DNA of 64,000 nucleotides, taken from the NCBI RefSeq assembly GCF_006345805.1, contig NC_043003.1, positions 48,608,001-48,672,000 on the forward strand. Direction: 5' to 3'. Numbering within the stretch: position 1 is the stretch's first letter; each line of letters starts with the position of its first letter. Both the position numbers and the translations under genes were made by a program. This DNA is from Octopus sinensis (Eukaryota). The notes beneath the pieces are model-generated. The model had not been told where the DNA came from, ran no database searches, and worked only from the letters and a program-made list of their open reading frames with translations. Shown here piece after piece: positions 20,526-57,807 of this stretch.

Positions 20526-21599
20526 GTAAACTATACCTTTAATATTTATAAATAGCCAATATCGGAACCAAAATGATGGTATTAGCAGTGAAAGCACAAT
20601 TATAATCCAAGGAAGGCGCCGAGCTGGCATAATCATTAGCACACCGGGCAAAATGCTTAGCGGTATCTTGTCCATTCACGTTCTGAGTCCAAATTCTGCC
20701 GTGGTTGACTTTGTCTTTCATCCTTTCGGAGTCAGTAAAATAAGTACCAGTTTTGCTGCAGGATCGATGTAATCGACTAGTCCCCTCCTCACAAAATTTC
20801 AGGCTTTGTGCTTGTAAGTAGAAAGGATTATAATCCTAAGATTAGATCAAGAAGGGATTCGAGGGGAAATACTTTAACAAATTGACGCAAAATACTGTCC
20901 CTATGATAGTAAGGGCAAACTGCCAATCACGAAGCGAATTCTAAAACTCTTCGGAATAAGCAGTCACGGGTTCATCTTCTCGGTACTGTGAAGTTATCTT
21001 AGAATTCACTGTCGTGAATATTGCATTTAAAATCTTTGTTATATTAGTGTTTTTTCTTCTTTTGTAATGAGCCATTGTTTTCCAAAATGTAATGCACGGT
21101 TTGAACTGAAACACATTATAGTCGCATCTTTTCTTTCTATGGTGAATTCATTAAGGTTATATTTGAATAATTGAAGTTGGCCTCAGAGATTCAGTGTTCG
21201 TGTAACATTTTTTTTAACTGTACAGGCTGAATATTTTTCTCCACAAACTAAAGTTTTAGGGTTTTTGTTTGAGAGATTTACTTTTTTTTGCCATTCCTTA
21301 TTTATTTAATTGTTTTATTCGAGATCGGAGATTAAGGCACAGTTTTAAACATTTATAGCACTTACAGACTTTTGGTCTTTCATCCGTTAATTAACACGAT
21401 ACAATTTTCCTAGATATTTTTCCATTGGAATGCTAAAAGCCTACAACAGGAAACAACATTATTTTTTCCCAATCGGAAATTCTCAAAATTAATTATTAGA
21501 CTATTTCATTATTATATCAGTTTACCCTCAGTTAAAGATAAAAAAAAGTGCTACTTTTAGAAAAAAAAAAGATAAAAAGAAAAGTGAAAAGGCTCTCTC

Positions 21600-34037: not shown

Positions 34038-34115
34038 TCCTTCTTTCTTCAAATTTTCTTCCGTTTCTCGCCGCCGCCGCCGCCGCCGCCGCCGTTGTTG
34101 TTGTTGTTGTTGTTG

Positions 34116-34146
<31 letters not shown>

Positions 34147-34181
34147 TGTTGTTGTTGTTGTTGTTATTATTATTGTTGTTA

Positions 34182-34246
<65 letters not shown>

Positions 34247-34248
34247 TA
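33973..34248. repeat. Compound trinucleotide tract (ATT)n-(GCC)n-(GTT)n-(GCT)n-(ATT)n containing a Dong-type 3' stub at ~34035-34070
   Basis: Directly visible; the stub matches the terminus of the 30558 element. Confidence 0.9.
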
Positions 34249-35670: not shown

Positions 35671-36834
35671 ACCGTTTCTCCTCCTCTGGAAATGAAGTAC
35701 AAGAAGTCCATAAATTACCTACGCATTACGGAAGTTTCAAAGTTAATTTACGAACACTCTGTATTGCTCTCAAAATGTGTAATCATCCTGTTGTACACCA
35801 CGGACATAATGATTTTTATAGGTCTTTAGCTTTCTAGGTCTCTGGTATCATTATCACCCGACTACTAGTCGGATGTTGATTCTACTTAACACTATTGAAT
35901 GCTGCTGCCATATACTCATGAGTATTTGTTAGACGTTTGTTAATTTCAGGAACTTACCAATTACTTCAGTTCTGAACATATTTATGAGTTCCTTACCGGC
36001 TTTGGTGGTTAATACTTGTGGTGCTATTCTGTATTTTTCTTTTCACTTTTCTCTTTTAAACCGATTTTCATTTTTGATTCTATTGATTGTCTTTGCCTCA
36101 TATTTTGTTTTCTCAGTGGCCATGAATTTTCGTTGTTATCGTCGTCTTCTAGTATTAGAAGACAATTGAACACGTCGGTGCAAAGTCCACAGACGCGATC
36201 GAATTAACAGATTGGTCTATTGAGCAATATGCCAACACTTCCACATAAAACAAATAAAAAGTAAAATAACTCTTTTTTTTTTTAGAACGGTGAAATTTGA
36301 AGCAGATAAAGCTATCAATAATACCGTGTGAATATTGTATTTAAAATCTTTTGAATAGAAAAAGTCGAAGGCTAACCGTGGGACTCAAACCCACAACTTC
36401 TGTAAACTTCTATCTCTGGATCAAAGCAACAACAAACAATTCTCGCTGGCAAAAATTCTTTCTGCTATAGGCACAAGGCCTAAAATTTGAGGGAGGGGGA
36501 TAGTCGATTACATCGTCCCCAGTACTCAGCTGGTACTTATTTTATTGACTCCGAAAGGATGAAAGGCAAAGTCGACCTCAGCGGAATTTGAACTGAGAAA
36601 GTGAAGACAGACGAGAAATACCCGGCGTGCTAACGATTCTGCCAGCTCACTGCCTTTCTTGCTGGTAAGAATAAAGTTTCTAAAATGGATAAGGAAATTC
36701 GAAGGGATGCTTTGGTCCAATGTGATAATGTTTGTCATGTTTGCAGGAGACGTGGATTCAGGAGAAACTTTCAGATTTTTCTATCCAGAGGGATTTTTAA
36801 CCTAATATTTACGTTATTATTTATAACTTTATAA

Positions 36835-39545: not shown

Positions 39546-40084
39546 TCACAGAGCATTTTGAAGACTGGTGTTGGAAGCTGCATTTGTAATTGGATGTGTC
39601 TCTTCTTCATTTTCGGCCTCGGCTCGCTTTTTGTCCTGGTTCCACGCCCATAACCAAACGATGAAGAATATCACACAAACTCCCAACAACAAAGCCACTG
39701 TAATGCCAATTGCTAGAGGTGTGTAATTTTCTTTAGCTTTCTCTTTAAAAGAATCCTTTTGAGAAGGTGCTGAATTAATTTCGCCAATTGTGTTACTAGA
39801 ACCGTGTCCATTGCTTGTTACACTTGCTATCGTTTTTATTTCAATGGACATTTTCGCCTCACTAGATGCTGTTACTCCATCTGTTGCCTTTGAAACAGGT
39901 TCTTTTAATTTTGAGATAAATTCTGATCTACCAGAATTATTTTCTACATCTGACGTAGTAAGCTTGTCTGGAGAAAAGGATGAAGATGGACGGATAACGG
40001 AAGTAGTTGCGGAATATGAGGCACTTGTAGATGTTGAAATTTTTTGAGTTTTAGTTGAACTTGGAATCCATTCCTTTGAAGTAT
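39546..40084 (-). CDS. SR-C-like receptor, last coding exon: Ser/Thr-rich stalk, transmembrane helix, ~33-aa cytoplasmic tail, stop
   Basis: Acceptor cttcttatcttttag (phase 1), 539 nt open to TGA. DTSKEWIPSSTKTQKISTSTSASYSATTS...ENYTPLAIGITVALLLGVCVIFFIVWLWAWNQDKKRAEAENEEETHPITNAASNTSLQNAL*; the hydrophobic helix is followed by KKR. Confidence 0.9.
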
Positions 40085-40709
40085 CTAAAAGATAAGAAGT
40101 AGGAAAGAATTGACATTTGTATTACCATAATATATATACACATATGTATGTACTTACGTACGCACACCCACACACGTTCACATACGTGCACGCGCGCGCG
40201 CACACACATACACACACACATAAACATGTGTAAGCGGATGGCTTTGTGGTTAGAGTGTTGGACTCATGATCTTAAGATTGCTGTTTCGACTCCTGGACCG
40301 GTCAATACGTTGTGTTCATGAGGAAAGCTCTTCATTTCACCTTGCTACAGTCCACTCAGCCGGCAAACATGACAGACCAGCGTCCCGTCCAGAGGGGAAT
40401 ATATGCGTCACGGAAACAGGGAAACTAACCCTATGAGTCGATATGAGTCATGAAGGATCTTTACCCTTTTTTATAGACAAACATCTCTCTCTCTCTCTCT
40501 CTGTATATATATATGTATATAAACAGACACACATACACATATTTATTTAAATTTAAATTTAAAATGAGGGTGAAAAATTGGATATTAATTTGATTAACAC
40601 CAGTTTAAAACCAGTGGTCTAGCATATTCAAATTTAAAGGTTCAGAAAATTGTATTACATACATATGAGTAAGAGGGAGAAAGAGAACGAGAAAGGAAGA
40701 GAGAGAGGG

Positions 40710-40752
<43 letters not shown>

Positions 40753-41002
40753 GAAAGAGAGAGACAGAGAGAGAGAAGACGTAACTTCTGCTGTGGGTAG
40801 TTGAATAATGATAAAGAGTAGTGATGAAGGGTAGGATGACTGCAGGAGCCGGAGGTGTAAAGCGGGCCCGAAATCCAGTTTAAGACTATTCTATACTGAC
40901 AAATTAATGATTCAGACACTAACCTCACAAATATTCAGTCAACTGAATCAATGACACAAAAATGTGCAAGTAAATCTGCACATGGGTTGTTGTTTTACTT
41001 AC

Positions 41003-41087
41003 CATTGCAACCAACACGCCACAGTCGAATGTCATCAATTGCAATGTCGTTTTGGTAATTCTTTTTGCGTACCCCTTGTATCACAAT
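41003..41087 (-). CDS. SR-C-like receptor, MAM domain exon 4 (phase 0-1)
   Basis: Acceptor gtcttgttaatag, donor G|gtaagt, 85 nt. IVIQGVRKKNYQNDIAIDDIRLWRVGCN contains the terminal DIAIDDI MAM signature and closing Cys. Confidence 0.93.
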
Positions 41088-41684
41088 CTATTAACAAGAC
41101 AAAATATCATAAAGGCATGAGCGATTAATACATACGTATATGCATAAATCCATACATACACATATAATACATATCAACATTATATATACGAACAGAAAGA
41201 CAGCCCTCCGGGCGGTATTCTGCTAGCCACTCGATAATATTTCCACATTTGATTCCCAATTCTAATAATTTTTATGATATTTTAAGTCTAATTATTTTCT
41301 TGTATCATAGTGCACACTTGCTTAGTAAATATTGCTTTCATTATTTTATCACAGTCATAATCTCTCTTTTTAAGCAAACATCAAAGTAATCCAACTACGT
41401 TTAATGTGCAAAAAAAAATAGCAGCGATCACATAACGATATTTTAATACTTATAGCGTATTAGTTTATTTACGTCCCCGTAACTTAGCGATTCGGTAAAA
41501 GAGACCGACAGGATGAGTAGCAGACATTAAAAAGTAAGTACTGGGGTCAATTTGCTGGAGTAAGACCCTTCAAAGGCAGTGCCCTCAATATGGTCACTAA
41601 CTGGAACAATTAAAATATTAAAAAAAAAAAAGAGAAATAGAAAAAGATACAGCGCCAAAAAGAGCATAGATATTTTTATATTAC

Positions 41685-41827
41685 CTGAAACGATTCTGTT
41701 ATGTTTTCCAGTTGAATCTTTACCTGGTGCCACTTATTTCCATGATCACCAGTCTCATTAAACAGAATATTGGATTCATTCAAGTATTTACTTACTGGAC
41801 GCAAATACATCTGTAGAAAACCAGGTT
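41685..41827 (-). CDS. SR-C-like receptor, MAM domain exon 3 (phase 1-0)
   Basis: Acceptor caatttattccag, donor CAG|gtaata, 143 nt. EPGFLQMYLRPVSKYLNESNILFNETGDHGNKWHQVKIQLENITESFQ has the G-x-x-G-x-x-W MAM motif. Confidence 0.9.
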
Positions 41828-42491
41828 CTGGAATAAATTGCAAAGTGTTAAGAAGAAGAAAATGAGCAAAAATATAAATCTTGAAACTAATGTCTTATAA
41901 TCTAATGTAATTTGATGGATCACAAAGGGCCGAGTCGATGGAATACCGAACCTTTGACTGAAAAGCTAACATTTAGTATTCAATAACTTGATAAAACCCG
42001 TCAGTATCAAATAGCTGTATACGTAGTTATTCAACCGTAGGCAACTTTGAACGAGCAAACCTCTTATCAAAAACATTCTGGCTGCAACCATTTCAGTTTA
42101 CTCTTTTTTTCACCATGTTTACGATTTCAAGTATGATATCAGAGAATTTGACTCCTATATCTAACAAGTCGAACGATCACATAGGGTCTCCCTCTTTAGC
42201 ACGTATAACTTTATACTTCACATATGCATTAGATATATAAGTTGGTGCTAAGTGAGTTGCGTTTACATGCTACATACAATATATTTATATAATTGCCTTG
42301 TGTATAACTCACAACAACTGTATAATTAACCAATATATCATCGACTTGCTGCAGCACCATATTAAGAAACATCCCTTGAGCATCATGTGGCGTATATTTC
42401 GATGCATTTGGTTTACATTTTGATACACTGTGTATTAAGGACAATTACTCAAGAGGTGAACTTTCACTCCGTGGATCACAAAGCTTAGTTT

Positions 42492-42527
<36 letters not shown>

Positions 42528-43274
42528 ATGCGAGAATAAAAGGAAATAATTTTGCAAGAACACGAGCAACTATTATTTAAATCTTGTTTTAAATATTTAT
42601 CGTTGTTCCACGTAAAATTACTTTAATAATTCATAAAGTGTATTTTCGATTACTATATTTAACGGTTTGTCAATTAAATGTGTTACTTCGTCTGTAATAT
42701 CTTCATTGACGTTCATGAACGTGGAGTCAGTAGCAGATATCTAACGAACATGGTTTATTTCTAACATAAACACAAGGTCTCATATTTTCAGGGAAGATAT
42801 ATTCGATTTAGATCAACCCCCAGAAGGATGAAAGGCAAAGTTGATCTTCCCAGGATTCGAAATCTGAAGATAACGAGGCGTAAATAATATCCGTTGGTTA
42901 TTTTGTCCGATGTTCTATCAAATCTGCCAGTCCTTTGTCATATACAGCATACAGGAGGAGACCTCCTTCCCATGAAGGACAATGGGATTGCACCTAGAAA
43001 GTTACCCTCCGAGACCCAAGTCCGAGCAAGGTTGTTTATGGAAGACCAGCAATCGCCCATGCATACCATACCCCACTCTCCACGCCACAGATGTTTTCCA
43101 AGGGAAAGGCAAAGGCCTATACGGCTTGGCACCAGTGACGTCGCAACTCAATTCTACAGCTGAGTGAACTGGAGCAACGTGAAATAAAGTGTCTTGCTCA
43201 AGAACATAACACGCAGCCCAACCTCACGATCGTAAGCTCGACGCTCTAACCACTGAGCCATGCACCTTCACACA

Positions 43275-43326
<52 letters not shown>

Positions 43327-43589
43327 CATGTGTCCGTCGCTCAGCGTTGTCCATGCATCTACACTTGTATGTGCATTCTTAGGCAAGTCATTTCTTTGGA
43401 GAAGGCTGGCAATTGTCGATGCAGACAAATTTCCCCTCTTCGCGTCACCAGTGTCATTGTAAGCATTGCTGACAGAAGGCGAAAAAAGCCAGGACGAATA
43501 TCGCAAGACACACCACCTGACACTCTAGCAGGTCCCGCCAATCTACTCACCAAATATTACAAGTTATTACAAAGAAAGTAAATATGTAC

Positions 43590-43724
43590 CGTTTGTTCCT
43601 TGGCACCACATGTGGTACCAAAATTCAAAACACATTGTAGAGTTGGTTCCTACAAATAAAGGAGACAATAGTCTCGCTTTGCTGTCGAATTTCCGATTAG
43701 AGGCTTCCATGTACATGTAGTAAC
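43590..43724 (-). CDS. SR-C-like receptor, MAM domain exon 2 (phase 1-1)
   Basis: Acceptor ttttatttcacag, donor G|gtacat, 135 nt. GYYMYMEASNRKFDSKARLLSPLFVGTNSTMCFEFWYHMWCQGTN has the YMYxEAS, ARLLSP and CFxFWYHM motifs. Confidence 0.93.
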
Positions 43725-44240
43725 CTGTGAAATAAAATTTTACTTAAATTGATATACTTTCAGAAACAGTGGCATATACTATGTGAATTGGTGCAATACA
43801 TAAATACATACATACATACATACATACATACATAAATTCTCATGCACGCACACAAATCACACAAATAACATGAGTAAAACTTGAGACAAAGAGCTAACAA
43901 ACAAACAAAAACATTTTACGCAATGTTATACAAACAAAAGTACGTGCCTGAATAGTGGTACCCCCCCACCACCACCACACACACACACACATATATATAT
44001 TGGTAAAAATGGGCGCACGTTAGCAGATCGTATTACTGAATATTTGAGTGACATCCGGCTACACACCATCACAACACTCATTAGGTACCACTTCAGCTCA
44101 CTTGCACATGCTATTTCTCATCCCCTGCATCTTGCTAATAAAAAGAACGAAGCCTCATCTTTCGCCTCGTCTACTTCGACCTTCGAATGTACATACATAC
44201 ATACATACATACATACATACATACATACATACATACATAG

Positions 44241-44315
<75 letters not shown>

Positions 44316-44525
44316 ACACACAAGTGAAAACAAGGGAGACAGAGAAAGGCAGAATGCCACTTATATTTGAACACTATACAAATATTCCTTAAAAAAAACT
44401 TCTCTTTTAATTTTTCTAAATTTAATTATTTAATCGTTACAGTTGAAAAGATCTCAAAATGACCAAAACCGGTACTGAAATGTTCTTTATAAAATTATTT
44501 TAGCATTTTTTATTTTGACTTGTTT

Positions 44526-44604
<79 letters not shown>

Positions 44605-44778
44605 ATATGTTATACATTCTAATAATTACTGATATCTTTATATATTATATATGTAAAGCATAATATGTTATACATGTATATATATTGCTATAATTGTCCG
44701 TTTAGTAAATAAATAAATAAATTGACATAATATAAAGTTGATGAATACCACTTATTGATCCCGTCCATTTTCTTATTG

Positions 44779-44829
<51 letters not shown>

Positions 44830-44851
<22 letters not shown>

Positions 44852-45600
44852 GGAGACCATAGACCTGACATTTAAGATAGAAAATAACGAAGTTTTCGAT
44901 TTTTCGATGCAGGCGAAATAGTCTGACATAAAAGCAACGATTGGTTTGGTTGAAGAAGCGGAGTTTTGTTCTGGACGTAAAAGTTTGTGCTACACCAGGC
45001 TCAGGAGCAGGGGTATGATCCGGGTTGGGTATAGGAGGCTTTGAAGAACTGTAAAGCAAGAAGTCCCGCAAATAAGGGGCTCGTTTGAAGCAAAGGAAGC
45101 GTCGTTCACGAATAGTGGGGAGGTGACAGGGTGTAAACGGAGTAGGCGGAAAGAGATAGGGTATTGAGGTAAAGGGTGATGGAGGAAATGGGAAAATGGT
45201 CAAGGGAATGGCAGATACAGGGTGTAATTTCAGAGGTACGATCAACGCTATGGGTGTGGAGAAGAGCATTATTAACAATAGTTTGGGGATAATCTCGATG
45301 CATAAATTAGAGAGTACTGTGTAAAACTGGGTTTGAAAATAGTGACCATAAATACAAAGACGATGAAGTCATAGAAACATCGAGTAGAAAGAGTTAGAAT
45401 TATAAGAGTGGGAAGAGGGAAGTCGAGGTAAGAGCGCAAGTCTATAGGTTGCGTATAAATTTTACAAGAAGAGAACTTATGTTTGAGACAAATGTCGAAG
45501 CTGATGAAATCGGCGTAGACTGAAATCGCGATTTTGGTTGTCGATCCGCGACGTTATTTCTGTTTTAACCAACACAGTGTACAGCAGCATTAGATAAACA
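44830..45600 (-). mobile_element. Penelope-like retroelement fragment (RT C-terminus and GIY-YIG region) in an intron of the receptor gene
   Basis: Degenerate HRDYPQTIVNNA (RGYP motif), FKRAPYLRDFL and VIFYLKCQVYGLLYI (CxxCG..YIG-like); ends in a TA microsatellite. Confidence 0.7.
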
Positions 45601-45659
45601 GTACAATCATTTTTTTTTATAAGTTGTATTACATAATTAAAATTTAAGGTCATATTTAC

Positions 45660-45815
45660 CTTTTCCTAAATCTCCATATGTGTGGTCACTTGAAGGTCCT
45701 GTGTACTTGGTGCCAGTATCCAGTGAATGTCTTGTCCAGTCAAACTCCTCTGTGTGGTCTTGCAGCCAACCACACCTTCCCTCTTCAAAATTGCAATGAT
45801 TTTCTAATGCAGTTT
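45660..45815 (-). CDS. SR-C-like receptor, MAM domain exon 1 (phase 1-1)
   Basis: Acceptor ttccgattgcag, donor G|gtaaat, 156 nt. TALENHCNFEEGRCGWLQDHTEEFDWTRHSLDTGTKYTGPSSDHTYGDLGK has the MAM CxFE..CGW, FDW and TGP..DHT motifs. Confidence 0.93.
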
Positions 45816-45831
45816 CTGCAATCGGAAATTG

Positions 45832-45903
<72 letters not shown>

Positions 45904-46395
45904 GAGTGAGAGAGCAGTGCATGCCATCAAAGTGACACTGGGGTAAAATATACGAAGCCCAGTATACCCATCATGACTACCCGCCTGATAAGGGTACACC
46001 AGGCACATGCACCACAACCATATTTGCGCGACATGCTGATCTCACATCAAGATAAACAGCACATGACCTTGCAGGTGGGGCCCAGTTAGAATTTTCTTCT
46101 GGTCGAGTAACCCATCTCGCTCAAAAGGTCCCTGAATAAGGGTTGTTTAAGGATGTTGCACGAAACACCCATGTTTGCAGAGGTGAATTATTCAAACCCC
46201 AAAGAATCCCTCTCAACACATGGCTATGATGCTCCCCCCACTACTTCTGCTCGTGATCAGAGATGCACATATCGTCAGCTACTAAGGGACATGCTCAACT
46301 GGTTAAGGTCAAACAACTAACCAGCAGATCTGTGGTATTGAGCAGAATATTTGCTGTAGCCCATCTTTTATACCAAGACAAAACAATGTACATGA
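45904..46395 (-). mobile_element. Interspersed retro-repeat with (AAT)n tail abutting the MAM exon 1 acceptor
   Basis: 3' end gcatgcactgctctctcactc-(AAT)n; the same terminus recurs at ~31378-31410. Confidence 0.6.
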
Positions 46396-46746
46396 TAACA
46401 CTTAAGTTGAGGCATCAGAGTTTAGTACGATATTATCCATACAATTTCAAAATAAGGTGATTAAAAAAAAATCAGTTACAGGCTGTGCCTTCTTGAAAAT
46501 TTTAGTTAAGGCTATGCTGTTGTAGGTACAACCTGTTCTTTGACTATCTCCTTAACTTCTTGGAGATTTTATGTATAATTATACTAATGTGTTTATCTGT
46601 TCTAATTTAATTAAATTCTATGTCTTTGTGCTACTGAAGATTTCTCTACATTTTAAATTGATGTAATGATTGCATTGTTCAATTAAATGGAGTTAGATGA
46701 AACGATCGTACTGCATTACCTCTGTATATCCTTGTTGCTTATTTTG

Positions 46747-46812
<66 letters not shown>

Positions 46813-47599
46813 CGACGGGCTTCCATACATATTCCGTCGATCAAATTCACCCACAAGGCGATGTCACTTGCTCAAGGTGGTATGCAGTGGCACTGAACTC
46901 GAAACTACGTGGTTACAAAGCGAGCTTCATAACTACGCAGCCATGCCTGCGCCTATTACCAAGTGTCAATATAATAAATATATATTTAAAAAAAGCTACT
47001 CATAATAACATAAATTTGGTAACTTTCAGTTATCATGCTACTTGGCAACTTTAAAGGGAATGCGTAAACAAGAGAGGTATTTCCACGAGATTTGTGGAAT
47101 GTTTATCAACATTGTTTGAATGACAACAATAGAACAAACAGTCAGTAGTAGTTTTACTAATTTTCTCCTTCAGTTTATATTTATTATATCTGATCAGTTT
47201 CATCCGCATCAAACATAGGTGGGTCTGTATTAATTCTCTGGTTTCCGTGGTTTAATCTAATTTATATTTTCATTACGAATTAATTAGCCTCTTGTCAGAT
47301 TAGATTTGTTGCGTTTGTCTGATACCGGACTAATTTTCATGTACCAGCCATATCCATATACAAAACTTAGAAGGTTCTTCAGCAGGGAAATTTGGCTGCT
47401 ATTCTGATCAGGTCGAGCGATCAAGTAGTCGATACCATCAAACGCTGTACTTGTCTGGTACTCGATATAACCGATACCAAACGGATAAAAGATGAAGTTA
47501 ACCTCTGCGTGGTCAGAACTTAGAACGTAAAGATGCGAAAAAAAATACTACAGTGTATTTTGTTCGTTCTAACGACGATTCGGTCAATCTGCTGCCCTT

Positions 47600-48155
47600 G
47601 ACAGTAACACTGATAGTTCTTTTTAATTTTGACACTAGGCCAGCAGTTTAAAGAGAAGATTATATCAACCTCAGTACTTGAATGGTATTTTATTTTATCG
47701 ACACCGAAAGGATGAATGACATTTGTGACTCAGAACGTAAAGCCGAAAGAAATGATGCTAAGCATTTTCCCGGTGTGCTTATGATTCAACCACCACGCCT
47801 TGACAATGATACTAACAGTCCTTTCTACTCAGTTGGTACTTATTTTATAGACTCCAAAAGGATGAAAAGCAAAATCGACCGCAGCTGAATTTGAACTCAG
47901 AACGTGGAGAGGGATGAAATACCTATTTCTTTACTACCCACAAGGGGCTACACACAGAGGGGACAAACAAGGACAGACAAACGGATTAAGCCGATTATAT
48001 CGACCCCAGTGCATAACTGGTACTTATTTAATCGACCCCGAAAGGATGAAAGGCAAAGTTGACCTTGGCGGAATTTGAACTCAAAACGTAACGGCAGACG
48101 AAATACGGCTACGCATTTTGCCCGGAGTGCTAACGATTCTGCCAACTCGCCTTGA
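47600..48155 (-). mobile_element. SINE family B cluster (three partial or complete units)
   Basis: Repeated central domain at ~47690, 47840 and 48030. Confidence 0.8.
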
Positions 48156-48919
48156 CAATAACGCTAATAATAACAGCAATGACAATAGCAGCAGCTAGAT
48201 CTATATAAGTTCAACAACGGCGGCTGTATTAGCATCAGTCAGTTCTGTATAATAAATGTAAGTTGACACATTGATCCTCTACTTCCAAATAAGAATATAC
48301 TGAAAAATATTTTGAATCTGTATTTTTATAGTAAGTAAAATGCTTGCGCTTAGCGTACAAGTCGCATATCAACGAGGGTGCGTGGCTTAGTGGTTAGGAA
48401 TTTTCGGTTCACGATTTTTAAGTCGTGAGTTCAATTCCTGGCAGCGCATTGTGCCCTTGAGCAAGATACTTTCTTTCGTAATGTTCCAATCTAGACAAAA
48501 ATGAGTAATACATGTATTTGAAAGGACCAACCTTATAACATTCCGTGTCATGCTGAATCCCTCTGACAACTAAGTTAAGGTACGAGTATCTGTGGAGTGC
48601 TCGACCACTTGTACATTAATTTCACAAGCAGGTTGTTCCGTTGATCAGATCACCTGGAACCCTCGTCGTCGTAACCGATGGCGTGCCAGAAATAAAAAAA
48701 AGAATAATTCCATCCATCCATCCACCCACCCACCAAAAATGTCTCCGAGGAAACTAGTGGCCGTCAGACTAATATTGATAACGATCATAGAAGGAAGTTT
48801 GTGAGTTTGGATACGTTTGTGTGCCTTGGTCGAGGAGATGCTGACGTTTCGGACTAACCGTTCATCTTCGCGGGATAAAATAACAGAAAAGAAATTTGTG
48901 TTATTAAATTAGTACTCAC

Positions 48920-49090
48920 TTAAACATGTTGGAGGCAGTTTATTCCAATTAAATCTGTTACAGAATACTCTGTTCTCCTTTTTTTCCATTGCATAGCCGG
49001 GTTTGCACTGAAAGGTGGCTAACGCCCCACGATGAGTGTATGTAACATCAAGAATACTATGATTGAATTGCATTGGACGGCAACCACTTG
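48920..49090 (-). CDS. SR-C-like receptor, CCP/sushi domain 2 exon (phase 1-1)
   Basis: Acceptor ttttctttcattgcag, donor A|gtgagt, 171 nt. ASGCRPMQFNHSILDVTYTHRGALATFQCKPGYAMEKKENRVFCNRFNWNKLPPTCL contains FxCxxGY and W-x4-P-x-C motifs. Confidence 0.92.
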
Positions 49091-49505
49091 CTGCAATGAA
49101 AGAAAAAATGCATAAAATGTTAATTTCTGAATTTTGTGACGTATATAACCACCCAACTTCCACTTAAGTAATTGAACACCAAGAATAATTAAACCCCAAT
49201 ATATTTCTGGTATATATTATTGTTTTTCATTGGCTTTGAATAAATGAGAAGTATAGCATGTATTTTCCAGTCAAATAATAATAATAATAATAATCTTTTC
49301 TACTGGAAGCACAAGGCCTCAAATTTGGGGGAAGGGATTAAGTCAATTACATCGACTCCAGTGCGTAACTGTTACTTAATTTATCGACCCCGAAAGAATG
49401 AAAGGCAAGTTGACCTCGGCGGAATTTGAACTCAGAACGTAGCGACGGGCGAACAACCGCTAAGCATTTCGTCCAGTGTGCTAATGATTCTGCCAGCTGG
49501 CTGCC

Positions 49506-49570
<65 letters not shown>

Positions 49571-50096
49571 TGGCTGAACCCGTGAAAACTTCACCGAAAA
49601 TATAAAATATGTAAGCATCTGTAAATTATGTGCTGGTGCCATGAAAAATGTTTCTATATTGTGACAGTTACAGAATATAGAAAGAAGTGTAAAACCGATA
49701 ACTATATAATCCAACCAAAATATCTCAGTTAAGCAAACGTAAACACAATTACTATTTAGCCTTAAAATACATCGTACATATTCAAAGAACCTTCTTGGTT
49801 TAGTGGTACGGAACGTTCTTCTGGAATTCTTTTATTCTTTTACTTGTTTCAATCATTTGCCTGTGGCCATGCTGGAGCACCGCTCTTTCGTCGAAGAAAT
49901 CGACCCCTGAACTTATTCCCTGTAAGCCTGGTGCTTATTGCATCCGTTTCTTATGCCGAGCCGCTAAGTTACGGGGACGCAAACGCACCAACATCGGTTG
50001 TCAGGCGATGTTGATGAGGGACAAACACAGACCCATCCCCACAGACCTACCCCCCACACACACGCAGGCACACATGCGCACACACACACGCACACA

Positions 50097-50130
<34 letters not shown>

Positions 50131-50287
50131 ATTAAAATAAGCAACAGGATATCCAGAGGTGATGCTGTACAACATCTGGATATCCTGTTGCTTATTTTGA
50201 TTTTATTCACCGTATTTTTGAGTTGTACGGATAATACCGCACTAATTTTTGGTGCTTCAACTTAGGTACCTAATTCAACTGAATATC

Positions 50288-50333
<46 letters not shown>

Positions 50334-53268
50334 CGGGCTTCTTTCAGTTTCCGTCTACCAAATCCACCCATAAAGCTTTGTTCGGCCCTAGGCTATAATA
50401 GAAGATACTCTATAAAGTATAGAGTTGAATTTCGTGTAGCCATGTTTTGGTAACTTTTCTACCCTGTACTACCCATTTTTCTGGGTTCTTTTCACAGCTA
50501 CACCCCATTCGAAATTTGCATTAGTTTTTGTATGGAGAAAAAAAAAAAAAAAGAAGGAAGGGAGCGGGGCTTGTCTGTAGTTTGTAGAGAAAGCGTTAAA
50601 CGTGCCTGAAAAAAAAAAACATGGTCTTTTCCCCCAAACTAAAAGACATGCAGAACTATCAAACAAGACCCGGGGTGGGGGGAAGAAGAGAGAACTAACA
50701 CTCGATCATCCTAGAATTCCTAGAATGAAAACCTAAACACCTGAAAGACTTTCCCTCTATTCATTACTAAATCTCTTTCCTTCTTCTTCATTGTTAAAAG
50801 TAAAGAAGCTACAAAAGATCGGTCGTATTTCATTCTAATTGTCATTTTAAATGACTGAGACTTTCCTTTCCCCGTCTCTATCGCTTCACTCCTTTTCTTT
50901 ACGGTTAAGAGAGTGAAATTGCGTGACTCAGTGGTTAGGAGTGTTGGGCCCACCTTCCTTTCAGTCATCACTCTCTGTTTGTTTCTCTCTCTCTAACTCA
51001 CTCTCTCACTCTTTCTCTCTTTTTTTCTCTCTCACTTCACTTCTGTCCCACCTCTCTCTCGCGTTGCCACTCACTTCAACTATACCTCCTCTATTTAACA
51101 CCTTTTATCTCTCTTTTTCTTTGTACCTCTCCCTTCAACTTTTTTATGTTTTCCTTTTTACGTAACATACACCACTGGTACGTACGTACAAAAGCAAGCG
51201 TATGAACATTTTTGATAATGATAATAATAATAACAATCCTATCTACTATAGACACAAAGCTTGTAATTTCACCGACCCCAGTGTTTCACTGGTACTTAAT
51301 TTATCGACCCCGAAAGGATAAAAAGACAAAGTCGACCTCTGTGGTACTTGAAATCAGAACGTAGCGACAGGCGTAATATCGCGCGTTGGACGAAGTACTT
51401 AGCATTTCATCCAGTGATCTAACGATTCTGCCAGCTCGCCGCCTTAATAATAATAATGATGATGATCATGTTGATAATCATGATAATTTCTTCTATTAAA
51501 GGCAGAAGGTCTGAAATTTTGAGGGGAAGCAAACGTGGTGTAGAGACAGCGTGCCATTGATGAGGTCGCGATGGCAGCAAAAAGACTTTGACAAACTTAG
51601 CCGATTAATTGATTTATCGATCAAAAGATTAATTAAATAATCGATTAGTTAACAGTTAAATGTTAACGAATGGACTAAAAGTAATAAAAGAAATGAAATT
51701 GAACCAGTGCATGTGCTTATTGTTAGCAAAATGACCCTCCCGAGACACAACACAAATATGGTTCAATACATGAGTTCACATCATGAAAGTTGCGAGCCGA
51801 ATACAAAAGCCAATTAATAATAATGAATAAATATGTGCTAACCAAATGAAAGTAATGAGAATGGTATATCATTTTACAGAGATTGTGATGATAAATAGGA
51901 CGAAAGCTATAACGACAACGACAATGGGAATGACATCGACGACAATGACGACGTCGATGACGACGACGATGATGATGACGACAACTACGACGATGCCGAT
52001 GATGACAATGATGATAAGGAGTGGGAGGAAGTAAGGAAAATGTGGGACAGAAGAGGATTAATGGAGCACTGCCTTAAGGGGTTTTAGTCGAACAAATGGA
52101 TCTCAGGACTTACTTTTTAAACCTAGTACTTATTCTATCAGTCACTTTTACTGAACCGCTATGTTAGGTGGATGTACACACACCAACATCGGTTGTCAAG
52201 CGGGACAAACACAGACACAAAGTCACAAACACATAGATATACACATATATGTACGACAGGGTTCTTTCAGTTTCTGGCTACCAAATCCACTTACGAGCAT
52301 ATAGTAAGAGATACTTGCTCAAACTTTCACGCAATGGGACCATGTGATTAGGAAGCAAGCTTCTTACCACACAGCTACGCCTGCGCCTATATAGGTGTGT
52401 GTGTGTATGTGAGTGAGTGAGGGTGTGTGTGTATACATGTGTTTGTGTATATTTGTTTATATAAGTATCAATGAACGTGCACCTTTATTAAATACTTGCA
52501 ATTATGTATACATACATACATACACACGTGCGAGCGCCACGTATATTTATTATTACGTGTGTGCTCACGCGTGTGTATGCATTTCATTGTCTCTTAGGTT
52601 TAGCCTCTATTCAAATGGCAGAATTTCACAAATCTCTAATCTTCACGTGAATCTCCAATATTAGTTTTATTCTAATACAATATATATTAGGAACGTGCTT
52701 CTGATTCTAAGCCAATTCGTTAAGCCACAAACGAAACTGCAGGCTCTTGAGTCACTTTTGTAACTTTGTTCTTTTATTAGGGTTGGCTTGATGTTAAAGA
52801 CTAATACTAACAATACCACGACTGCTACGTTGCTATATTCGTTGTTTAAAAATCCCTCTCACATGCCAACAGGCATGGTTTATCTTGCGTTATCTTACGA
52901 GCTTTCCTTTCTTTATTAAATCAGTAGAGCATATTTGAAGGAAGTCTGACTGCTATTTGTAGAAGCCCCAGGCTCAGAAACTGCTCGGGGGCGTGCTCAT
53001 TGACTCACTTCGTGTTGTTGTTTGGCACCAGATAATCCTCTATGTTCGAAGGCATTGATGCCTTGGTAATTCGGCATTTTCCCTTTTTATACATGGAATC
53101 CAGGATAGTATCATATAACGCGTCTTTTTCTAAGATGATAGCGTGGAATTCGAGGGAATTCAGTTGCTTATTCTAGCAAATCAAACGACAGTGTTTAGGC
53201 TCCTTTGCTGGTTTGCATTAATTCGGCAAAGATAACACCAATTGCACACGCACGCACGCACACACACA

Positions 53269-53322
<54 letters not shown>

Positions 53323-53669
53323 ACACACACACAAGCACACACACACAAGCACACACGTACGCATATACATGTACACATGCAAATACATGCACACATATGA
53401 GCCACGTGAAAGGAAGCTCTGATTAATAACGCTCTTCACACGTACAACTGTGTGTTGAAACACTTGACTTGTGCCAACACTATTAATATGTTATTTTGGG
53501 AAATAAGGGAAAGAAATTCGAAAAAAAAAGCAAAACGCTTGGGGAATAAGAATATTGTTGGTTTTCTTGTTTTCAAATTAGCGATCTTGTGTGTGTATGG
53601 GTGCGTGTGTGTGTGTGTGTGTGTATGTGTGTGAGACCATGTATTTGTGGATATAATATCACTGTATAG

Positions 53670-53682
53670 ATATAAATGAACA

Positions 53683-53755
<73 letters not shown>

Positions 53756-53871
53756 GTCTGTCTGTCTGTCTGTCTGTCTGCCTGCCTGCCTGCCTGCCTG
53801 CCTGTCTGTCTGTCTGTCTGTCTGCCTGTCTGCCTGTCTGTCTGTTTGCCTGTCTGTCTGTTAAATGAACA

Positions 53872-53925
<54 letters not shown>

Positions 53926-53937
53926 CCTATCTATCTA

Positions 53938-53972
<35 letters not shown>

Positions 53973-53999
53973 TTCTGTCTGTCTGTCTGTCTGTCTGTC

Positions 54000-54033
<34 letters not shown>

Positions 54034-54066
54034 TTGTCTTTCTGCCTATCTGTTTGTCTGTCTGTC
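53670..54066. repeat. Duplicated compound microsatellite [taaatgaacat-(ATCT)n-(GTCT/GCCT)n] x2
   Basis: The unique leader taaatgaacatatctatc occurs at ~53672 and ~53862. Confidence 0.9.
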
Positions 54067-54439
54067 TTTATCTGTACTGTCACAAATTTACACAGATATG
54101 CAAAAAAATACTTTTATATATACTTTCATATATATATATTTGTACACACAGAGACACGCACGCACGCAAACACATACACACATGCACACACACGCACACG
54201 CACATACACATACGCACATACATACATGCACATGTATATGTATATATACGGAGGATATATAACGTAGATAAATCTACTGTTTATTTGAAAGGCTTAACTA
54301 TGGAGGTAGATTTGCTATAAAAACATTCTATTGTTATCCTAAGTAATCAGAAAAATATTTGGGAATCTTCTGGTAGATCTGTTTACAAATCTCTATATAG
54401 CTACTGTTCAAGGGAAAACCCATAAGAGAAATAGAAATT

Positions 54440-54595
54440 AATGTTGGTATTTTATTTACATTATTTATATTCGACGGATATTTGTCATCTTGTTTGTTGT
54501 TAACACAACGTTTCGGCTGATATACCCTCCGGCCTTCTTCAGGTGCCTTGGGGGAAATTTCGAACCTGGGTTCTCATTCCTAAGGTATCTTTCGA

Positions 54596-54626
<31 letters not shown>

Positions 54627-54630
54627 ATTA

Positions 54631-54682
<52 letters not shown>

Positions 54683-54788
54683 CATTATTATTATTATTAT
54701 TATTGTTATTGTTCAGGTCACTGCTTGGAATCGAACTCGGAATCTTGGGGTTAGTAGCTCGCGCTCTTAACCACTACGCCATATGCCC
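54440..54788 (-). mobile_element. tRNA-headed element with (AAT/AAC)n linker and Penelope-type hammerhead tail
   Basis: A box TGGCGTAGTGG, B box GTTCGATTCC, microsatellite, then GGCAC-CUGAAGA-A-GGCCG..CAGCC-GAAACGUU-GUGUU. Confidence 0.75.
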
Positions 54789-54791
54789 ACA

Positions 54792-54995
54792 GGCATATGG
54801 CGTAGTGGTTAATAACATCGAAAAATACCTTAGGAATGAGAACTCAGGTTCGAAAGACACCTGAAGAAGGCTGGAAAGTATATCAGCCGAAACGTTGCGT
54901 TAACAACAAACAAGATGAGGAGAAATATCCGTCGAATGTAAATAATGTAAATAATGTAAATGATGTGCATAATTCCTCATCTCTTAAATATAGGA
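54792..54995 (+). mobile_element. Inverted, internally deleted second copy of the tRNA/hammerhead element
   Basis: First 21 nt of the head fused to taacatcgaaaaatacc..., then GACAC-CUGAAGA-A-GGCUG..CAGCC-GAAACGUU-GCGUU and the same AT-rich tail. Confidence 0.75.
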
Positions 54996-55199
54996 ATGTT
55001 GGTATTATCCAATTCTTATTTCTTCTGCCAATGCTTTGCTGTAGGGTTAATCTGTTGCTGTTTGTACTCATTTTCAACTGAGAAAACTAGAATAACATAA
55101 AATGAAGTGTTTTTCTCAAAAACACAACGCATCGCCTGGCTATCGGAACTACTATATCAAGTAATCTTTAGACTGCAATATATAATTTGGGAAGGGCAC

Positions 55200-55612
55200 G
55201 GCTGCGAATATATGTAGCCAAATACGGTTCCTCAAAAAAGGCTTCTGGTGTAACATTATTCGACAGGGTGTCTAACTCGGCGATCAGGGAATCTCTTTGA
55301 GTCCAGCCGCTATTTGTCTGCATTGAGAAGTCACAGATCCGGTACAACGAATGCGTGATCAGAATGTCGCAGGAAAGAATTGCAAGACGGATTTCACAAG
55401 CCGTGCCAACCGGCAGGAAATCTAAGGGCAGACCAAGAACGAGATTGTTTGGTAATATTCATAGTCTCAGTTGGTCATGCTTGGGAATCCAGCCAAAAAG
55501 TCTACTGATGGTTGCTTCTGATAGAATCCTACGAAGATGTCTTTAGATTCTACTCCCACGACCCTTCTAGGGATAAAATATGGAAAAGATGGATGAATGG
55601 ATGGATGATTAT
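55200..55612 (+). mobile_element. RTE-clade LINE 3' fragment
   Basis: VIRMSQERIARRI..TGRKSKGRPRTR, the GHV.RM..R....G.R..GRP motif; ends in a (GGAT)-like tail. Confidence 0.7.
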
Positions 55613-55677
55613 TCAAAAAATTATTTAACAAAATGGAAATTTTGAAGAAATATGGTGGAAAGAAAATCAAAACTCAC

Positions 55678-55842
55678 CGACACACATAGGAGGGTCTTTG
55701 GACCAAGTATCCCGGTTGCATTCAGCAAAACGCTGACCGACCAATGCAAATTTTCGCTTGCAGCTGAAGAATACATATCTCCTCGAATCTCTGTATTTTA
55801 CTTTCAGGTTTGGTACTTTTCGAATGTGAGGACATCTACCCT
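55678..55842 (-). CDS. SR-C-like receptor, CCP/sushi domain 1 exon (phase 1-1)
   Basis: Acceptor ttcattcttttag, donor G|gtgagt, 165 nt. Translates GRCPHIRKVPNLKVKYRDSRRYVFFSCKRKFALVGQRFAECNRDTWSKDPPMCV with the 4-Cys + W-x4-P-x-C sushi pattern. Not in the ORF track. Confidence 0.9.
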
Positions 55843-56359
55843 CTAAAAGAATGAAAGAAAGAGCAACAATATTAAAAATGTTAACTGAAATTCTTCACTT
55901 AGTTGCGAGGCTAAATTTTTATTGAGAAGGAAATCAAGATTGTGTAACTTCATTCTGTTTTAATTATTATTATCCTTTAACCAGTTGGTTTCAGTCATTG
56001 GACTACGGCCACCCGAAGAATGCAGAACATTGACTTCGAAGAGTATCGTTGATCATATCGACACCCAGTACTTGCATTTATTTCGGTGTGGTACTTACCT
56101 TTTTTTTTATCGTTCTCTATTTTCCGAATCGATTAATTACCTATTTAACCAGAGTGGACAAACAAGGACAGACAAACGGATTAAGTCGATTATATCTACC
56201 CCAGTGCGTAACTGGTACTTATTTAATCGACCCCGAAAGGATGAAAGGCAAAGTCGACCTCGGCGGAATTTGAACTCAGAACGTAGCGACAGACGAAATA
56301 CTGCTAAGCATTTCGCCCGGCGTGCAAACGTTTCTGCCAGCTCGCCGCCTTGATGGCTA

Positions 56360-56860: not shown

Positions 56861-57807
56861 TCATTTAGTGTATGTATGTATGTATGTATGTATGTATGTA
56901 TGTATGTATGTATGTATGTATGTGTATGTATGTATGTTAATTTGTAAGACATTGTCAATTCGGGAATACAGTAAAAGAAAATCAAAATGCTGTACAATGG
57001 GATCGAAACCAGAACACCAAACGTACAAAGCGAGAAATTTTTGATCGCATAGACATATTTCTTTCTTACCAAGTCCTTTGAGTTTGTTGCAATGGTTAAT
57101 ACTTACTACAGAGAATGTCTTCATGTTATGATAGAGAGAAAAAATGTTTTTTTATCAAAGGTATCTCACTACTATTGATAATTCCTTGGGTAAAGGACGT
57201 TTTCAGCAAGATATTTTCTGTAGAGGCTGTTAGTAGAAGGTAAATAATTCTTGGAAACAGTTTTGGTTTCTGTCAATATAATCTTTAAAAACGACAAATA
57301 AATCAGTCAAAAGCAGCGATTTGTTAAAGGACGAGTGATTATCGCTTGCATGTCTTGTTTATCATATGTGATGCATAATACACGCATCGTACGTAATATA
57401 TATTCTCATTTTTTTAAACCACCAGAGTAACTTAGGACTTACGATAAAAAAGTTTTATATATCTCAGAACATGCATAAATACATACATAAATATCACCGT
57501 GATCACTGTGACCGACCAGGCTATCAGATGTTGTTACACATCGCTGGTCACAATGCGCTTCGCATTGTTTTAGCCTTCAAATGACGCCACCCCGCTGGCT
57601 AAGCGAGCAGGCCAACAGAAGAAAAAGTGAGAGAAAGTTGTGGCGAAAGAGTACAGCAGGGCTCGCCACCACCCCCTGCCGGAGCCTCCTGGAGGTTTTA
57701 GGTCTTTTCGCTCGATAAACACTCACAATGCCCGGTCTGGAAATCGAAACCGTGATCTTACGACTGCGAGTCCGATGGGCCATTGCGCCTCCACACATCA
57801 TACATAA

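What the first reader, a model, noticed from the sequence alone, without database searches (positions are those of the whole stretch)
39546..55842. Class C scavenger-receptor-like gene (CCP-CCP-MAM-mucin-TM) in an apparently cephalopod genome
Seen: seven minus-strand exons with GT-AG ends and matching phases (1-1,1-1,1-1,1-1,1-0,0-1,1-stop) join into 1394 nt of open frame encoding two sushi domains, a complete MAM domain, a Ser/Thr stalk, one TM helix and a short tail. Four of the seven exons are invisible in the ORF track. Known: this domain order defines insect and crustacean SR-C (Drosophila SR-CI binds bacteria and polyanions and mediates dsRNA uptake); the Drosophila protein also has a somatomedin-B domain, for which no exon fits here. 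Inference: a molluscan SR-C-like pattern-recognition receptor, a class usually described as arthropod-restricted. I cannot verify whether it is already annotated.
Basis: partly seen in the sequence, partly recalled or inferred. Interest (0 to 1): 0.85.

Follow-up and report, generated by a model that had tools for sequence, protein, structure and literature searches.

The report
Octopus SR-C-like scavenger receptor gene
The window holds a real, already annotated Octopus sinensis gene for a membrane receptor built like the class C scavenger receptors of insects and shrimps, which extends that immune-receptor family to molluscs, although its function in octopus is untested.

Summary
Seven minus-strand exons (55842-39546), all AG/GT with the stated phases, join into 1394 nt. 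They encode CCP-CCP-MAM, a Ser/Thr stalk, one TM helix and a short tail.

The window is Octopus sinensis chromosome CM016865.1. [quoted passage not shown] It has no LDLa repeat and only one MAM.

The signal-peptide exon seen in O. vulgaris and O. bimaculoides lies outside the window. NCBI's model uses a proximal exon at 57124-57070 that encodes no signal peptide.

Orthologues with the same seven introns and phases occur in abalone and a nemertean; the same domain order is also found in a snail, an oyster and a cuttlefish.

Support for kinship with arthropod SR-C:
- An arthropod SR-C profile matches these proteins end to end, as its best non-arthropod hits.
- The closest solved MAM structure is Spodoptera SR-C.
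- CCP1 is unusually basic in both groups.

A MAM-only tree is unresolved. The somatomedin-B domain is absent, as in shrimp SRC. A 2026 preprint already lists a snail Sr-CI orthologue. Verdict: a new member of a known kind, of moderate interest; the pattern-recognition role is inferred only.

The parts
57070..57124 (-). Proximal alternative first coding exon used by the NCBI model XP_029639456.1 (MKTFSVVSINHCNKLKGL plus 1 nt, phase 1, donor GTAAG). It encodes no signal peptide.
   Evidence: Exact spliced mapping of P0001 on L001 and the sequence itself. Maximum Kyte-Doolittle 9-mer is 1.27, against 2.6-2.7 for the O. vulgaris and O. bimaculoides signal peptides. The ATG, frame and donor are also present in O. 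bimaculoides intron 1 at 93% identity.
55678..55842 (-). Exon for CCP (sushi) domain 1, phase 1-1. Strongly basic: net charge +10 over 54 residues.
48920..49090 (-). Exon for CCP (sushi) domain 2, phase 1-1, net charge +5.
45660..45815 (-). MAM exon 1 of 4, phase 1-1.
43590..43724 (-). MAM exon 2 of 4, phase 1-1. The intron after it is shared only with the lophotrochozoan homologues.
41685..41827 (-). MAM exon 3 of 4, phase 1-0.
41003..41087 (-). MAM exon 4 of 4, phase 0-1.
39546..40084 (-). Last exon. It encodes a Ser/Thr-rich stalk of about 116 residues (36% S+T), the TM helix AIGITVALLLGVCVIFFIV, a cytoplasmic tail of about 36 residues by that 19-residue TM window (WLWAWNQDKKRAEAENEEETHPITNAASNTSLQNAL), and the stop codon.
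   Evidence: dN/dS of TM plus tail is 0.05, of the stalk 2.1.
20941..21008 (-). Possible alternative terminal exon (acceptor AG at 21010-21009; encodes V-NSKITSQYREDEPVTAYSEEF-stop). Spliced to MAM exon 4, it would give a secreted CCP-CCP-MAM form without stalk or TM.
   Evidence: The C-terminus of O. vulgaris isoform CAI9725707.1 (P0353, 327 aa) is found exactly in the window. The only support is an annotation in a sister species.

Best explanation
This is the Octopus sinensis member of a conserved lophotrochozoan gene family that is the counterpart of arthropod class C scavenger receptors (SR-C).

The product is a type I membrane glycoprotein. A signal peptide (its exon lies upstream of the window) is followed by a very basic CCP1, CCP2, one acidic MAM domain carrying five of the protein's N-glycosylation sequons, a fast-evolving Ser/Thr stalk of about 116 residues that is probably O-glycosylated, one TM helix, and a short acidic tail under strong constraint.

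Shown: the gene structure, the domain order, the orthologues, the collinear similarity to arthropod SR-C, and the pattern of constraint.

Inferred by analogy with Drosophila SR-CI, shrimp MjSRC and Spodoptera SR-C: the stalk holds the CCP-CCP-MAM head above the cell surface. The basic CCP pair, together with MAM, binds polyanionic ligands such as microbial surfaces, modified lipoproteins and nucleic acids. MAM also mediates oligomerisation or protein ligands. The conserved tail recruits adaptors for clathrin-dependent endocytosis or phagocytosis, most likely in haemocytes.
For: - Gene model: exact and annotated independently in two species.
- Architecture: verified by Pfam in octopus, cuttlefish, abalone, pond snail, oyster and nemertean. 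These proteins have no LDLa repeat and no further domains.
- Lophotrochozoan orthology: Octopus sinensis, O. bimaculoides, Haliotis and Tubulanus share all 7 introns with identical phases, including one MAM intron absent from arthropod SR-C and from multi-MAM genes.
- Profile test: an HMM of 29 arthropod SR-C ectodomains hits all 12 lophotrochozoan proteins end to end (model 2-285 of 291) at 227-269 bits, as the best non-arthropod hits. The next best proteins reach at most 161 bits, over the MAM part only.
- CCP1 test: the arthropod CCP1 model scores their CCP1 at 38-63 bits, their CCP2 at 11-32, and any other sushi domain at 33 or less.
- Pairwise: 39% identity over 290 collinear residues with a beetle SR-C, E 1e-59.
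- Solved structures: the closest MAM by sequence (126 bits, against 96 for MDGA1, 75 for enteropeptidase and 57 or less for the rest) and by fold (8YT7, TM 0.79, rmsd 2.1 A, 39% identity; model pLDDT 86) is Spodoptera frugiperda SR-C.
- Charge: CCP1 net charge is +4 to +13 in every SR-C and SR-C-like protein (octopus +10). For 455 generic CCP domains the mean is -0.8, sd 2.7, and 0.2% reach +6.
- Selection: dN/dS between O. sinensis and O. bimaculoides is 0.39 for the head, 2.1 for the stalk and 0.05 for TM plus tail.
- Naming of the insect relatives: they are called 'Scavenger receptor class C' in UniRef and NCBI.
- Literature: shrimp MjSRC has the same SO-less architecture, binds a viral envelope protein through MAM, trimerises, and signals through beta-arrestin and clathrin (PMC5222524).
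Against: - The MAM-only NJ tree puts all 27 SR-C and SR-C-like MAMs in one 28-tip clade, but bootstrap support is absent: 3 or fewer interlopers in only 7% of 500 replicates.
- With a MAM-only arthropod profile, the margin over other MAM domains is a few bits (164 against 158).
- The intron positions shared with arthropod SR-C also occur in multi-MAM genes, so they do not discriminate.
- All modules are phase 1-1, so the same cassette could have been assembled twice by exon shuffling.
- No somatomedin-B domain is present.
- No expression, localisation or binding data exist for any lophotrochozoan member. The protein was not found by accession in the held text of two octopus skin-mucus proteomes.
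- The signal-peptide exon was not seen in O. sinensis DNA itself.
Confidence: 0.6

Rival explanations
1. Convergent architecture. The protein is a CCP-MAM membrane mucin assembled independently in Lophotrochozoa by shuffling of phase 1-1 exons. It serves cell adhesion or epithelial-barrier functions rather than scavenging or immunity.
For: All domain exons are symmetric phase 1-1. The MAM-only tree is unresolved. The margin of the MAM-only profile is small. MAM domains elsewhere mediate homophilic adhesion (RPTPmu, MDGA and meprin appear among the structural hits). Some homologues are auto-named mucin-like or zonadhesin-like.
Against: CCP1-to-CCP1 similarity is position-specific and exceeds that to any other sushi domain tested. 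The unusual basic charge of CCP1 is shared by both groups. The best solved MAM is insect SR-C by a 30-bit margin. Similarity to a beetle SR-C is collinear at 39% identity. An acidic cluster followed by a hydrophobic-[L/I]-[T/S] motif appears in both tails (noticed after the fact).
Confidence: 0.2
2. A true SR-C homologue whose main role is not immune recognition, for example endocytic clearance of endogenous polyanions or lipoproteins, or uptake of extracellular dsRNA.
For: Drosophila SR-CI was first defined by acetylated-LDL uptake and later implicated in dsRNA uptake (established knowledge). The snail RNAi preprint lists it as an RNA-uptake effector. The tail is strongly conserved.
Against: Nothing here distinguishes this from the immune reading. 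The fast-evolving stalk (dN/dS 2.1) fits either reading.
Confidence: 0.15
3. The seven exons are a fragment of a much larger multi-domain MAM/LDLa (MALRD-type) or zonadhesin-like gene, as the NCBI name suggests.
For: The NCBI name. Multi-MAM proteins dominate whole-protein score rankings.
Against: No LDLa repeat or second MAM is found by Pfam. No further MAM or CCP exon exists in the 64 kb. Orthologues in O. vulgaris, O. bimaculoides, Argonauta, Haliotis and Tubulanus all run from a signal peptide directly into CCP1 and stop after the TM and tail.
Confidence: 0.02
4. In O. sinensis the gene has lost its signal-peptide exon and is non-functional or cytosolic, as NCBI's N-terminus (MKTFSVVSINHCNKLKGL) would imply.
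For: No signal-peptide exon is found in the window or in the 3.1 kb beyond it. NCBI's model starts at a proximal exon without a hydrophobic core.
Against: The mature protein differs by one residue from that of O. vulgaris, which has the signal peptide. In O. bimaculoides the signal-peptide exon lies 30 kb upstream of CCP1, far beyond the DNA available here. All frames are intact and under purifying selection. The proximal exon is equally present in O. bimaculoides, where the annotators did not use it.
Confidence: 0.03

Closest known systems
Crustacean class C scavenger receptor (Marsupenaeus japonicus MjSRC, GenBank KU213605; PMC5222524)
   Same: Same domain order: two CCP, one MAM, one TM, a cytoplasmic region, and no somatomedin-B domain.
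   Different: MjSRC is longer (692 aa). Its sequence could not be fetched here, so no direct alignment was made. Its MAM-VP19 binding, trimerisation and beta-arrestin2/clathrin pathway have no tested counterpart in octopus.
Insect SR-C (Drosophila SR-CI/CG4099, Spodoptera frugiperda SR-C with MAM structure PDB 8YT7, mosquito SCRC, Tenebrio and Bombyx SR-C)
   Same: CCP-CCP-MAM head, mucin-like stalk, single TM and short tail. Identity is 28-39% over about 290 collinear residues. CCP1 is basic. Introns at SP|CCP1, CCP1|CCP2 and CCP2|MAM and two inside MAM are shared. The best structural match is 8YT7.
   Different: Insects carry a somatomedin-B domain between MAM and stalk (Pfam PF01033); octopus has none. 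The insect tail motif [ED]-V-R-[FY]-L-[TSA] has only a loose counterpart (PIT) in cephalopods. One MAM intron is specific to the lophotrochozoan genes.
Lophotrochozoan CCP-CCP-MAM-mucin-TM proteins (Haliotis 'zonadhesin-like', Lymnaea, Saccostrea 'mucin-5AC-like', nemertean Tubulanus LOC141908954, Sepia pharaonis CAE1261841.1)
   Same: Orthologous family. In the two non-cephalopod genes examined, Haliotis and Tubulanus, all seven introns have identical phases. The TM and juxtamembrane region is conserved (PL-IG...W-W-NQ-KK) and followed by an acidic cluster plus [PMI]-[IL]-T.
   Different: Stalk length and sequence vary widely, giving proteins of 479-788 aa. None has been studied experimentally. 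The only literature mention found is a snail 'SR-CI' entry in an RNAi-effector screen.
[quoted passage not shown]
   Same: Contains a MAM domain.
   Different: Has no LDLa repeat, only one MAM, and two CCPs. It is a small type I membrane protein rather than a giant multi-repeat protein. The name is a best-hit artefact.

Membership tests
Class C scavenger receptor (SR-C) | Two N-terminal complement control protein (CCP/sushi) domains | tested here: met
   Pfam Sushi with two stretches. Four Cys and the Trp are invariant in each CCP across 15 aligned homologues. The AlphaFold model is confident over both, pLDDT 83-93.
Class C scavenger receptor (SR-C) | A single MAM domain directly after CCP2 | tested here: met
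   Pfam MAM, E 1.6e-40, full length. The best solved relative is the S. frugiperda SR-C MAM, PDB 8YT7.
Class C scavenger receptor (SR-C) | Somatomedin-B domain between MAM and stalk (insect SR-CI type only) | tested here: not met
   No PF01033 hit. A tblastn with a beetle SR-C that carries the domain finds no such exon in the window. The domain is absent from all lophotrochozoan homologues. It is also absent from shrimp MjSRC, which is accepted as SRC (PMC5222524), so it is not defining for the class as a whole.
Class C scavenger receptor (SR-C) | Ser/Thr-rich mucin-like stalk, one TM helix and a cytoplasmic tail (type I topology) | tested here: met
   The stalk of about 116 residues is 36% S+T. 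The TM has a KD19 of 2.97. The tail is about 36 residues.
Class C scavenger receptor (SR-C) | N-terminal signal peptide | tested here: inconclusive
   Present in O. vulgaris CAI9725708.1 (mature part differs by 1 residue), O. bimaculoides and Argonauta. The exon is not in the window or in the adjoining 3.1 kb. In O. bimaculoides it lies 30 kb upstream.
Class C scavenger receptor (SR-C) | Whole-cassette sequence kinship with arthropod SR-C, above that to other CCP or MAM proteins | tested here: met
   The arthropod SR-C HMM hits end to end at 246 bits for octopus. All 12 lophotrochozoan proteins rank directly after the arthropods, with a gap of more than 65 bits to the rest. CCP1 similarity is position-specific. 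CCP1 charge is shared.
   The NJ point estimate gives one clade with a single interloper among 111 MAM domains, but bootstrap support is essentially nil. No ML program was available.
Class C scavenger receptor (SR-C) | Binds polyanionic ligands or microbes and mediates their uptake; expressed on phagocytes | not testable with these tools
   No RNA-seq or biochemical data are reachable. The only indirect support is the basic CCP1 (+10) and the constrained tail.
[quoted passage not shown] | LDL-receptor class A repeats alternating with multiple MAM domains | tested here: not met
   No PF00057 hit and a single MAM. There are no other MAM exons in the window.

The most novel reading that the evidence does not exclude
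SR-C is not an arthropod invention but an ancient protostome receptor. Its core (basic CCP1, CCP2, MAM, mucin stalk, TM, and an acidic tail with a hydrophobic-[L/I]-[T/S] motif) predates the split of Ecdysozoa and Lophotrochozoa. The somatomedin-B domain is a later insect insertion. In octopus the gene additionally makes a secreted CCP-CCP-MAM form through a distal terminal exon 18.5 kb downstream, giving both a cell-bound receptor and a soluble opsonin or decoy. If the receptor also takes up dsRNA as in Drosophila, it would be a handle for delivering RNAi to cephalopod cells.
Probability: 0.3. Interest if true: 0.5.

Novelty: new member of a known kind. Interest (0 to 1): 0.35.

Why it matters
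Cephalopod innate immunity is poorly mapped, and no phagocytic receptor of octopus haemocytes has been characterised. A clear SR-C counterpart gives a concrete candidate to test.

It also corrects a misleading automatic gene name, and it moves the origin of class C scavenger receptors back to the protostome ancestor, with the somatomedin-B domain as an insect-side addition.

Two features found here are directly testable hypotheses about how the class binds polyanions and signals: the universally basic CCP1 and the strongly constrained short tail.

The gain is incremental rather than surprising. The gene family is already in databases for several molluscs, and one preprint has listed a snail orthologue.

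Tried and rejected
1. Search for the signal-peptide exon in the window and in L001, using tblastn with the O. bimaculoides and Argonauta N-termini and exact peptide search with the O. vulgaris N-terminus. Not found. The in-frame hydrophobic stretch just upstream of the CCP1 acceptor (RISVNIFNIVALSFILLEG) is the polypyrimidine tract of the intron. It is preceded by a stop and has no ATG, so it was rejected as an exon.

2. Exhaustive HMMER search of 1.84 billion representatives with the ectodomain. The top 150 were swamped by multi-MAM and multi-sushi giants whose scores add up. It added only the Sepia orthologue.

3. Reverse word-index search with a mosquito SR-C. It named the arthropod family but did not return the mollusc proteins. 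I attribute this to the index and to multi-domain score summing, not to real absence.

4. Profile search with a mixed alignment. It found no further phyla. Absence cannot be claimed.

5. Intron positions as a test of orthology with arthropod SR-C. The shared MAM introns also occur in multi-MAM genes of the same species, so the test does not discriminate. It does firmly tie the octopus, abalone and nemertean genes together.

6. MAM-only NJ tree with bootstrap. Unresolved.

7. Looking for the protein by accession in the supplements of two Octopus vulgaris skin-mucus proteome papers. Absent from the held text.

8. Pfam on six long ORFs elsewhere in the window, plus Rfam and tRNA scans. Nothing significant.

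Full report
**Observation.** On the minus strand I located the seven exons by their splice sites and joined them. Their coordinates are 55842-55678, 49090-48920, 45815-45660, 43724-43590, 41827-41685, 41087-41003 and 40084-39546. Every exon is preceded by AG, and every one except the last is followed by GT. The 463-codon frame is open. Pfam finds a full-length MAM domain (E 1.6e-40) that spans four exons, plus two Sushi repeats.

[quoted passage not shown] The gene sits on chromosome CM016865.1 at 48.64-48.68 Mb. So the genome is indeed cephalopod, and the gene is already annotated, but under a best-hit name that does not fit. It has no LDLa repeat and only one MAM.

**Completeness of the model.**
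- The NCBI protein is 19 residues longer. It adds a first exon at 57124-57070 encoding MKTFSVVSINHCNKLKGL. That peptide has no hydrophobic core.
- The O. vulgaris orthologue CAI9725708.1 has a mature part that differs by a single residue. It begins instead with a typical signal peptide, MVAVKFFSIILFLEFFAELC. O. bimaculoides and Argonauta do likewise.
- In O. bimaculoides that exon lies 30 kb upstream of the CCP1 exon. In O. sinensis it is found neither in the window nor in the 3.1 kb beyond it. The true first coding exon is therefore almost certainly outside the window.
- The proximal exon is also intact in O. bimaculoides intron 1, so it may be an alternative start or an annotation artefact.
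- No other MAM or CCP exon exists in the 64 kb, and all orthologues run from signal peptide straight into CCP1.
- An O. vulgaris isoform (CAI9725707.1) replaces the stalk/TM exon with 22 residues. These are encoded exactly at window 21008-20941, behind a good acceptor. That would give a secreted head; the only support is that annotation.

**Relatives.**
- Proteins with the same order (signal peptide, two CCP, one MAM, Ser/Thr-rich stalk, one TM, short tail) occur in Argonauta, Sepia pharaonis, three Haliotis species, Lymnaea, Saccostrea and the nemertean Tubulanus.
- I mapped exons exactly onto genomic DNA for six genes. O. sinensis, O. bimaculoides, Haliotis and Tubulanus share all seven introns with phases 1,1,1,1,1,0,1. 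One of these is an intron inside MAM that is missing from two insect SR-C genes and from multi-MAM genes of Haliotis and Tubulanus. These are orthologues of one lophotrochozoan gene.

**Is the family SR-C?** The insect hits carry two CCP, MAM and a somatomedin-B domain, and their relatives are named 'Scavenger receptor class C'. I ran seven tests.
They align end to end at 227-269 bits. The next proteins reach at most 161 bits, on MAM alone.
2. The arthropod CCP1 model prefers their CCP1 (38-63 bits) to their CCP2 (11-32) and to every other sushi domain (33 or less). For CCP2 the preference is weaker.
3. Octopus against a beetle SR-C: 39% identity over 290 collinear residues, E 1e-59. Against a Drosophila SR-C-type protein (same CCP-CCP-MAM-somatomedin-B architecture): 28%, E 1e-24.
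4. Among all solved structures, the octopus MAM is closest to the MAM of Spodoptera frugiperda SR-C (8YT7). By sequence it scores 126 bits, against 96 for MDGA1 and 75 or less for the rest. By fold, using an AlphaFold model with pLDDT 86, TM-score is 0.79, rmsd 2.1 A and identity 39%.
5. CCP1 is strongly basic in every SR-C and SR-C-like protein (+4 to +13; octopus +10). For 455 generic CCP domains the mean is -0.8 (sd 2.7), and only 0.2% reach +6.
6. A MAM-only NJ tree of 111 domains puts all 27 SR-C and SR-C-like MAMs in one clade with one interloper, but bootstrap support is nil. A MAM-only profile separates them from other MAMs by only a few bits.
7. The introns shared with insects (SP|CCP1, CCP1|CCP2, CCP2|MAM and two in MAM) are also present in multi-MAM genes or are generic to CCP modules, so they are compatible with kinship but not diagnostic.

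Taken together, cassette-level homology with arthropod SR-C is well supported. The missing somatomedin-B domain does not exclude membership, because shrimp MjSRC, an accepted SRC, lacks it too (PMC5222524).

**Constraint and mechanism.** Between O. sinensis and O. bimaculoides, dN/dS is 0.39 for the CCP-CCP-MAM head, 2.1 for the stalk and 0.05 for TM plus tail. The TM and juxtamembrane region and an acidic cluster followed by [P/M/I]-[I/L]-T recur in all lophotrochozoan tails. Insect tails have an acidic cluster followed by R-[F/Y]-L-[T/S/A]. I noticed this resemblance after the fact, and it should be treated as a lead.

The protein therefore looks like a head held on a variable, probably O-glycosylated stalk, with a tail that must bind something. 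By analogy with the following, I infer an endocytic or phagocytic multi-ligand receptor whose basic CCP pair supplies polyanion binding:
- Drosophila SR-CI, where polyanions and bacteria bind and CCP plus MAM are sufficient (cited in PMC5222524).
- MjSRC, where MAM binds a viral envelope protein, the receptor trimerises, and beta-arrestin2 and clathrin act downstream.
- Spodoptera SR-C, which mediates endocytosis of a bound protein (PMC6191154).

None of this function is shown for any mollusc.

**Novelty.** Reviews state that SR-C has been found only in 'a few invertebrates', in practice insects and crustaceans. Searches of the open literature found no study of a molluscan SR-C. The exception is a 2026 preprint on snail RNAi genes, which lists Sr-CI orthologues. 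Its supplementary 'SR-CI' sequence is the MAM domain of the Lymnaea-type member of this very family (compare P0030). The octopus gene is thus a new, uncharacterised member of a known kind. What this analysis adds:
- the family's reach (three mollusc classes plus Nemertea);
- its conserved gene structure;
- the basic CCP1 signature;
- the constrained tail;
- the correction of the gene name and of the 5' end.

**Limits.**
- There is no RNA-seq.
- Only NJ trees were possible.
- The word-indexed searches miss distant relatives, so absence from annelids, brachiopods, chelicerates or deuterostomes cannot be claimed.
- No crustacean sequence could be retrieved.

Noticed in passing
window 57070-57124 (-): NCBI's O. 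sinensis model starts at a proximal exon without a signal peptide, while the O. vulgaris and O. bimaculoides models start at a distal signal-peptide exon. The proximal ATG, frame and GTAAG donor are conserved in O. bimaculoides intron 1. This is either an alternative promoter or a 5' annotation error in XP_029639456.1.
   Followed up: partly
window 20941-21008 (-): An exon 18.5 kb downstream of the stop codon encodes exactly the C-terminus of a 327-aa O. vulgaris isoform that skips the stalk/TM exon. It may give a secreted CCP-CCP-MAM form, or it may be a chimeric annotation.
   Followed up: partly
window 39546-40084 (-), stalk part: The O. sinensis and O. vulgaris stalk is about 50 residues shorter than that of O. 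bimaculoides (482-484 against 532 aa) within one continuous exon. Stalk dN/dS is about 2, so the spacer evolves fast in length and sequence.
   Followed up: partly
window 26879-27211, 36521-36669, 47829-48156, 49359-49507, 56024-56351, 60418-60566, 63758-63906; also 2634-2805, 14303-14474, 21890-22061, 23724-23895, 50312-50483: Two dispersed families of short (about 150-260 nt) interspersed repeats, 60-91% alike, lie in both orientations inside and around the gene's introns. They look like SINEs but give no tRNA or Rfam match.
   Followed up: partly
whole window, e.g. 4337-5475, 53562-54280, 34039-34276, 45820-45900: Microsatellites and low-complexity tracts (TA/CA/ATAC-type, AAT/ATT runs) are very dense. 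They create many long spurious ORFs rich in Y/I/C/V or N/I/L. GC is 21-43% per 2 kb.
   Followed up: no
window 31710-32252 (+), 32646-33134 (-), 33570-34163 (-): Three ORFs of 160-200 codons downstream of the gene resemble, from memory, remnants of non-LTR retroelements. Pfam gave no hit, so this is unverified.
   Followed up: partly
P0031 (Saccostrea homologue) residues 741-779: There is a sub-threshold Pfam match (17 bits against a cut-off of 27) of the TM/tail region to Hemotin, a Drosophila phagosome-maturation peptide. It is probably only TM-helix composition.
   Followed up: no
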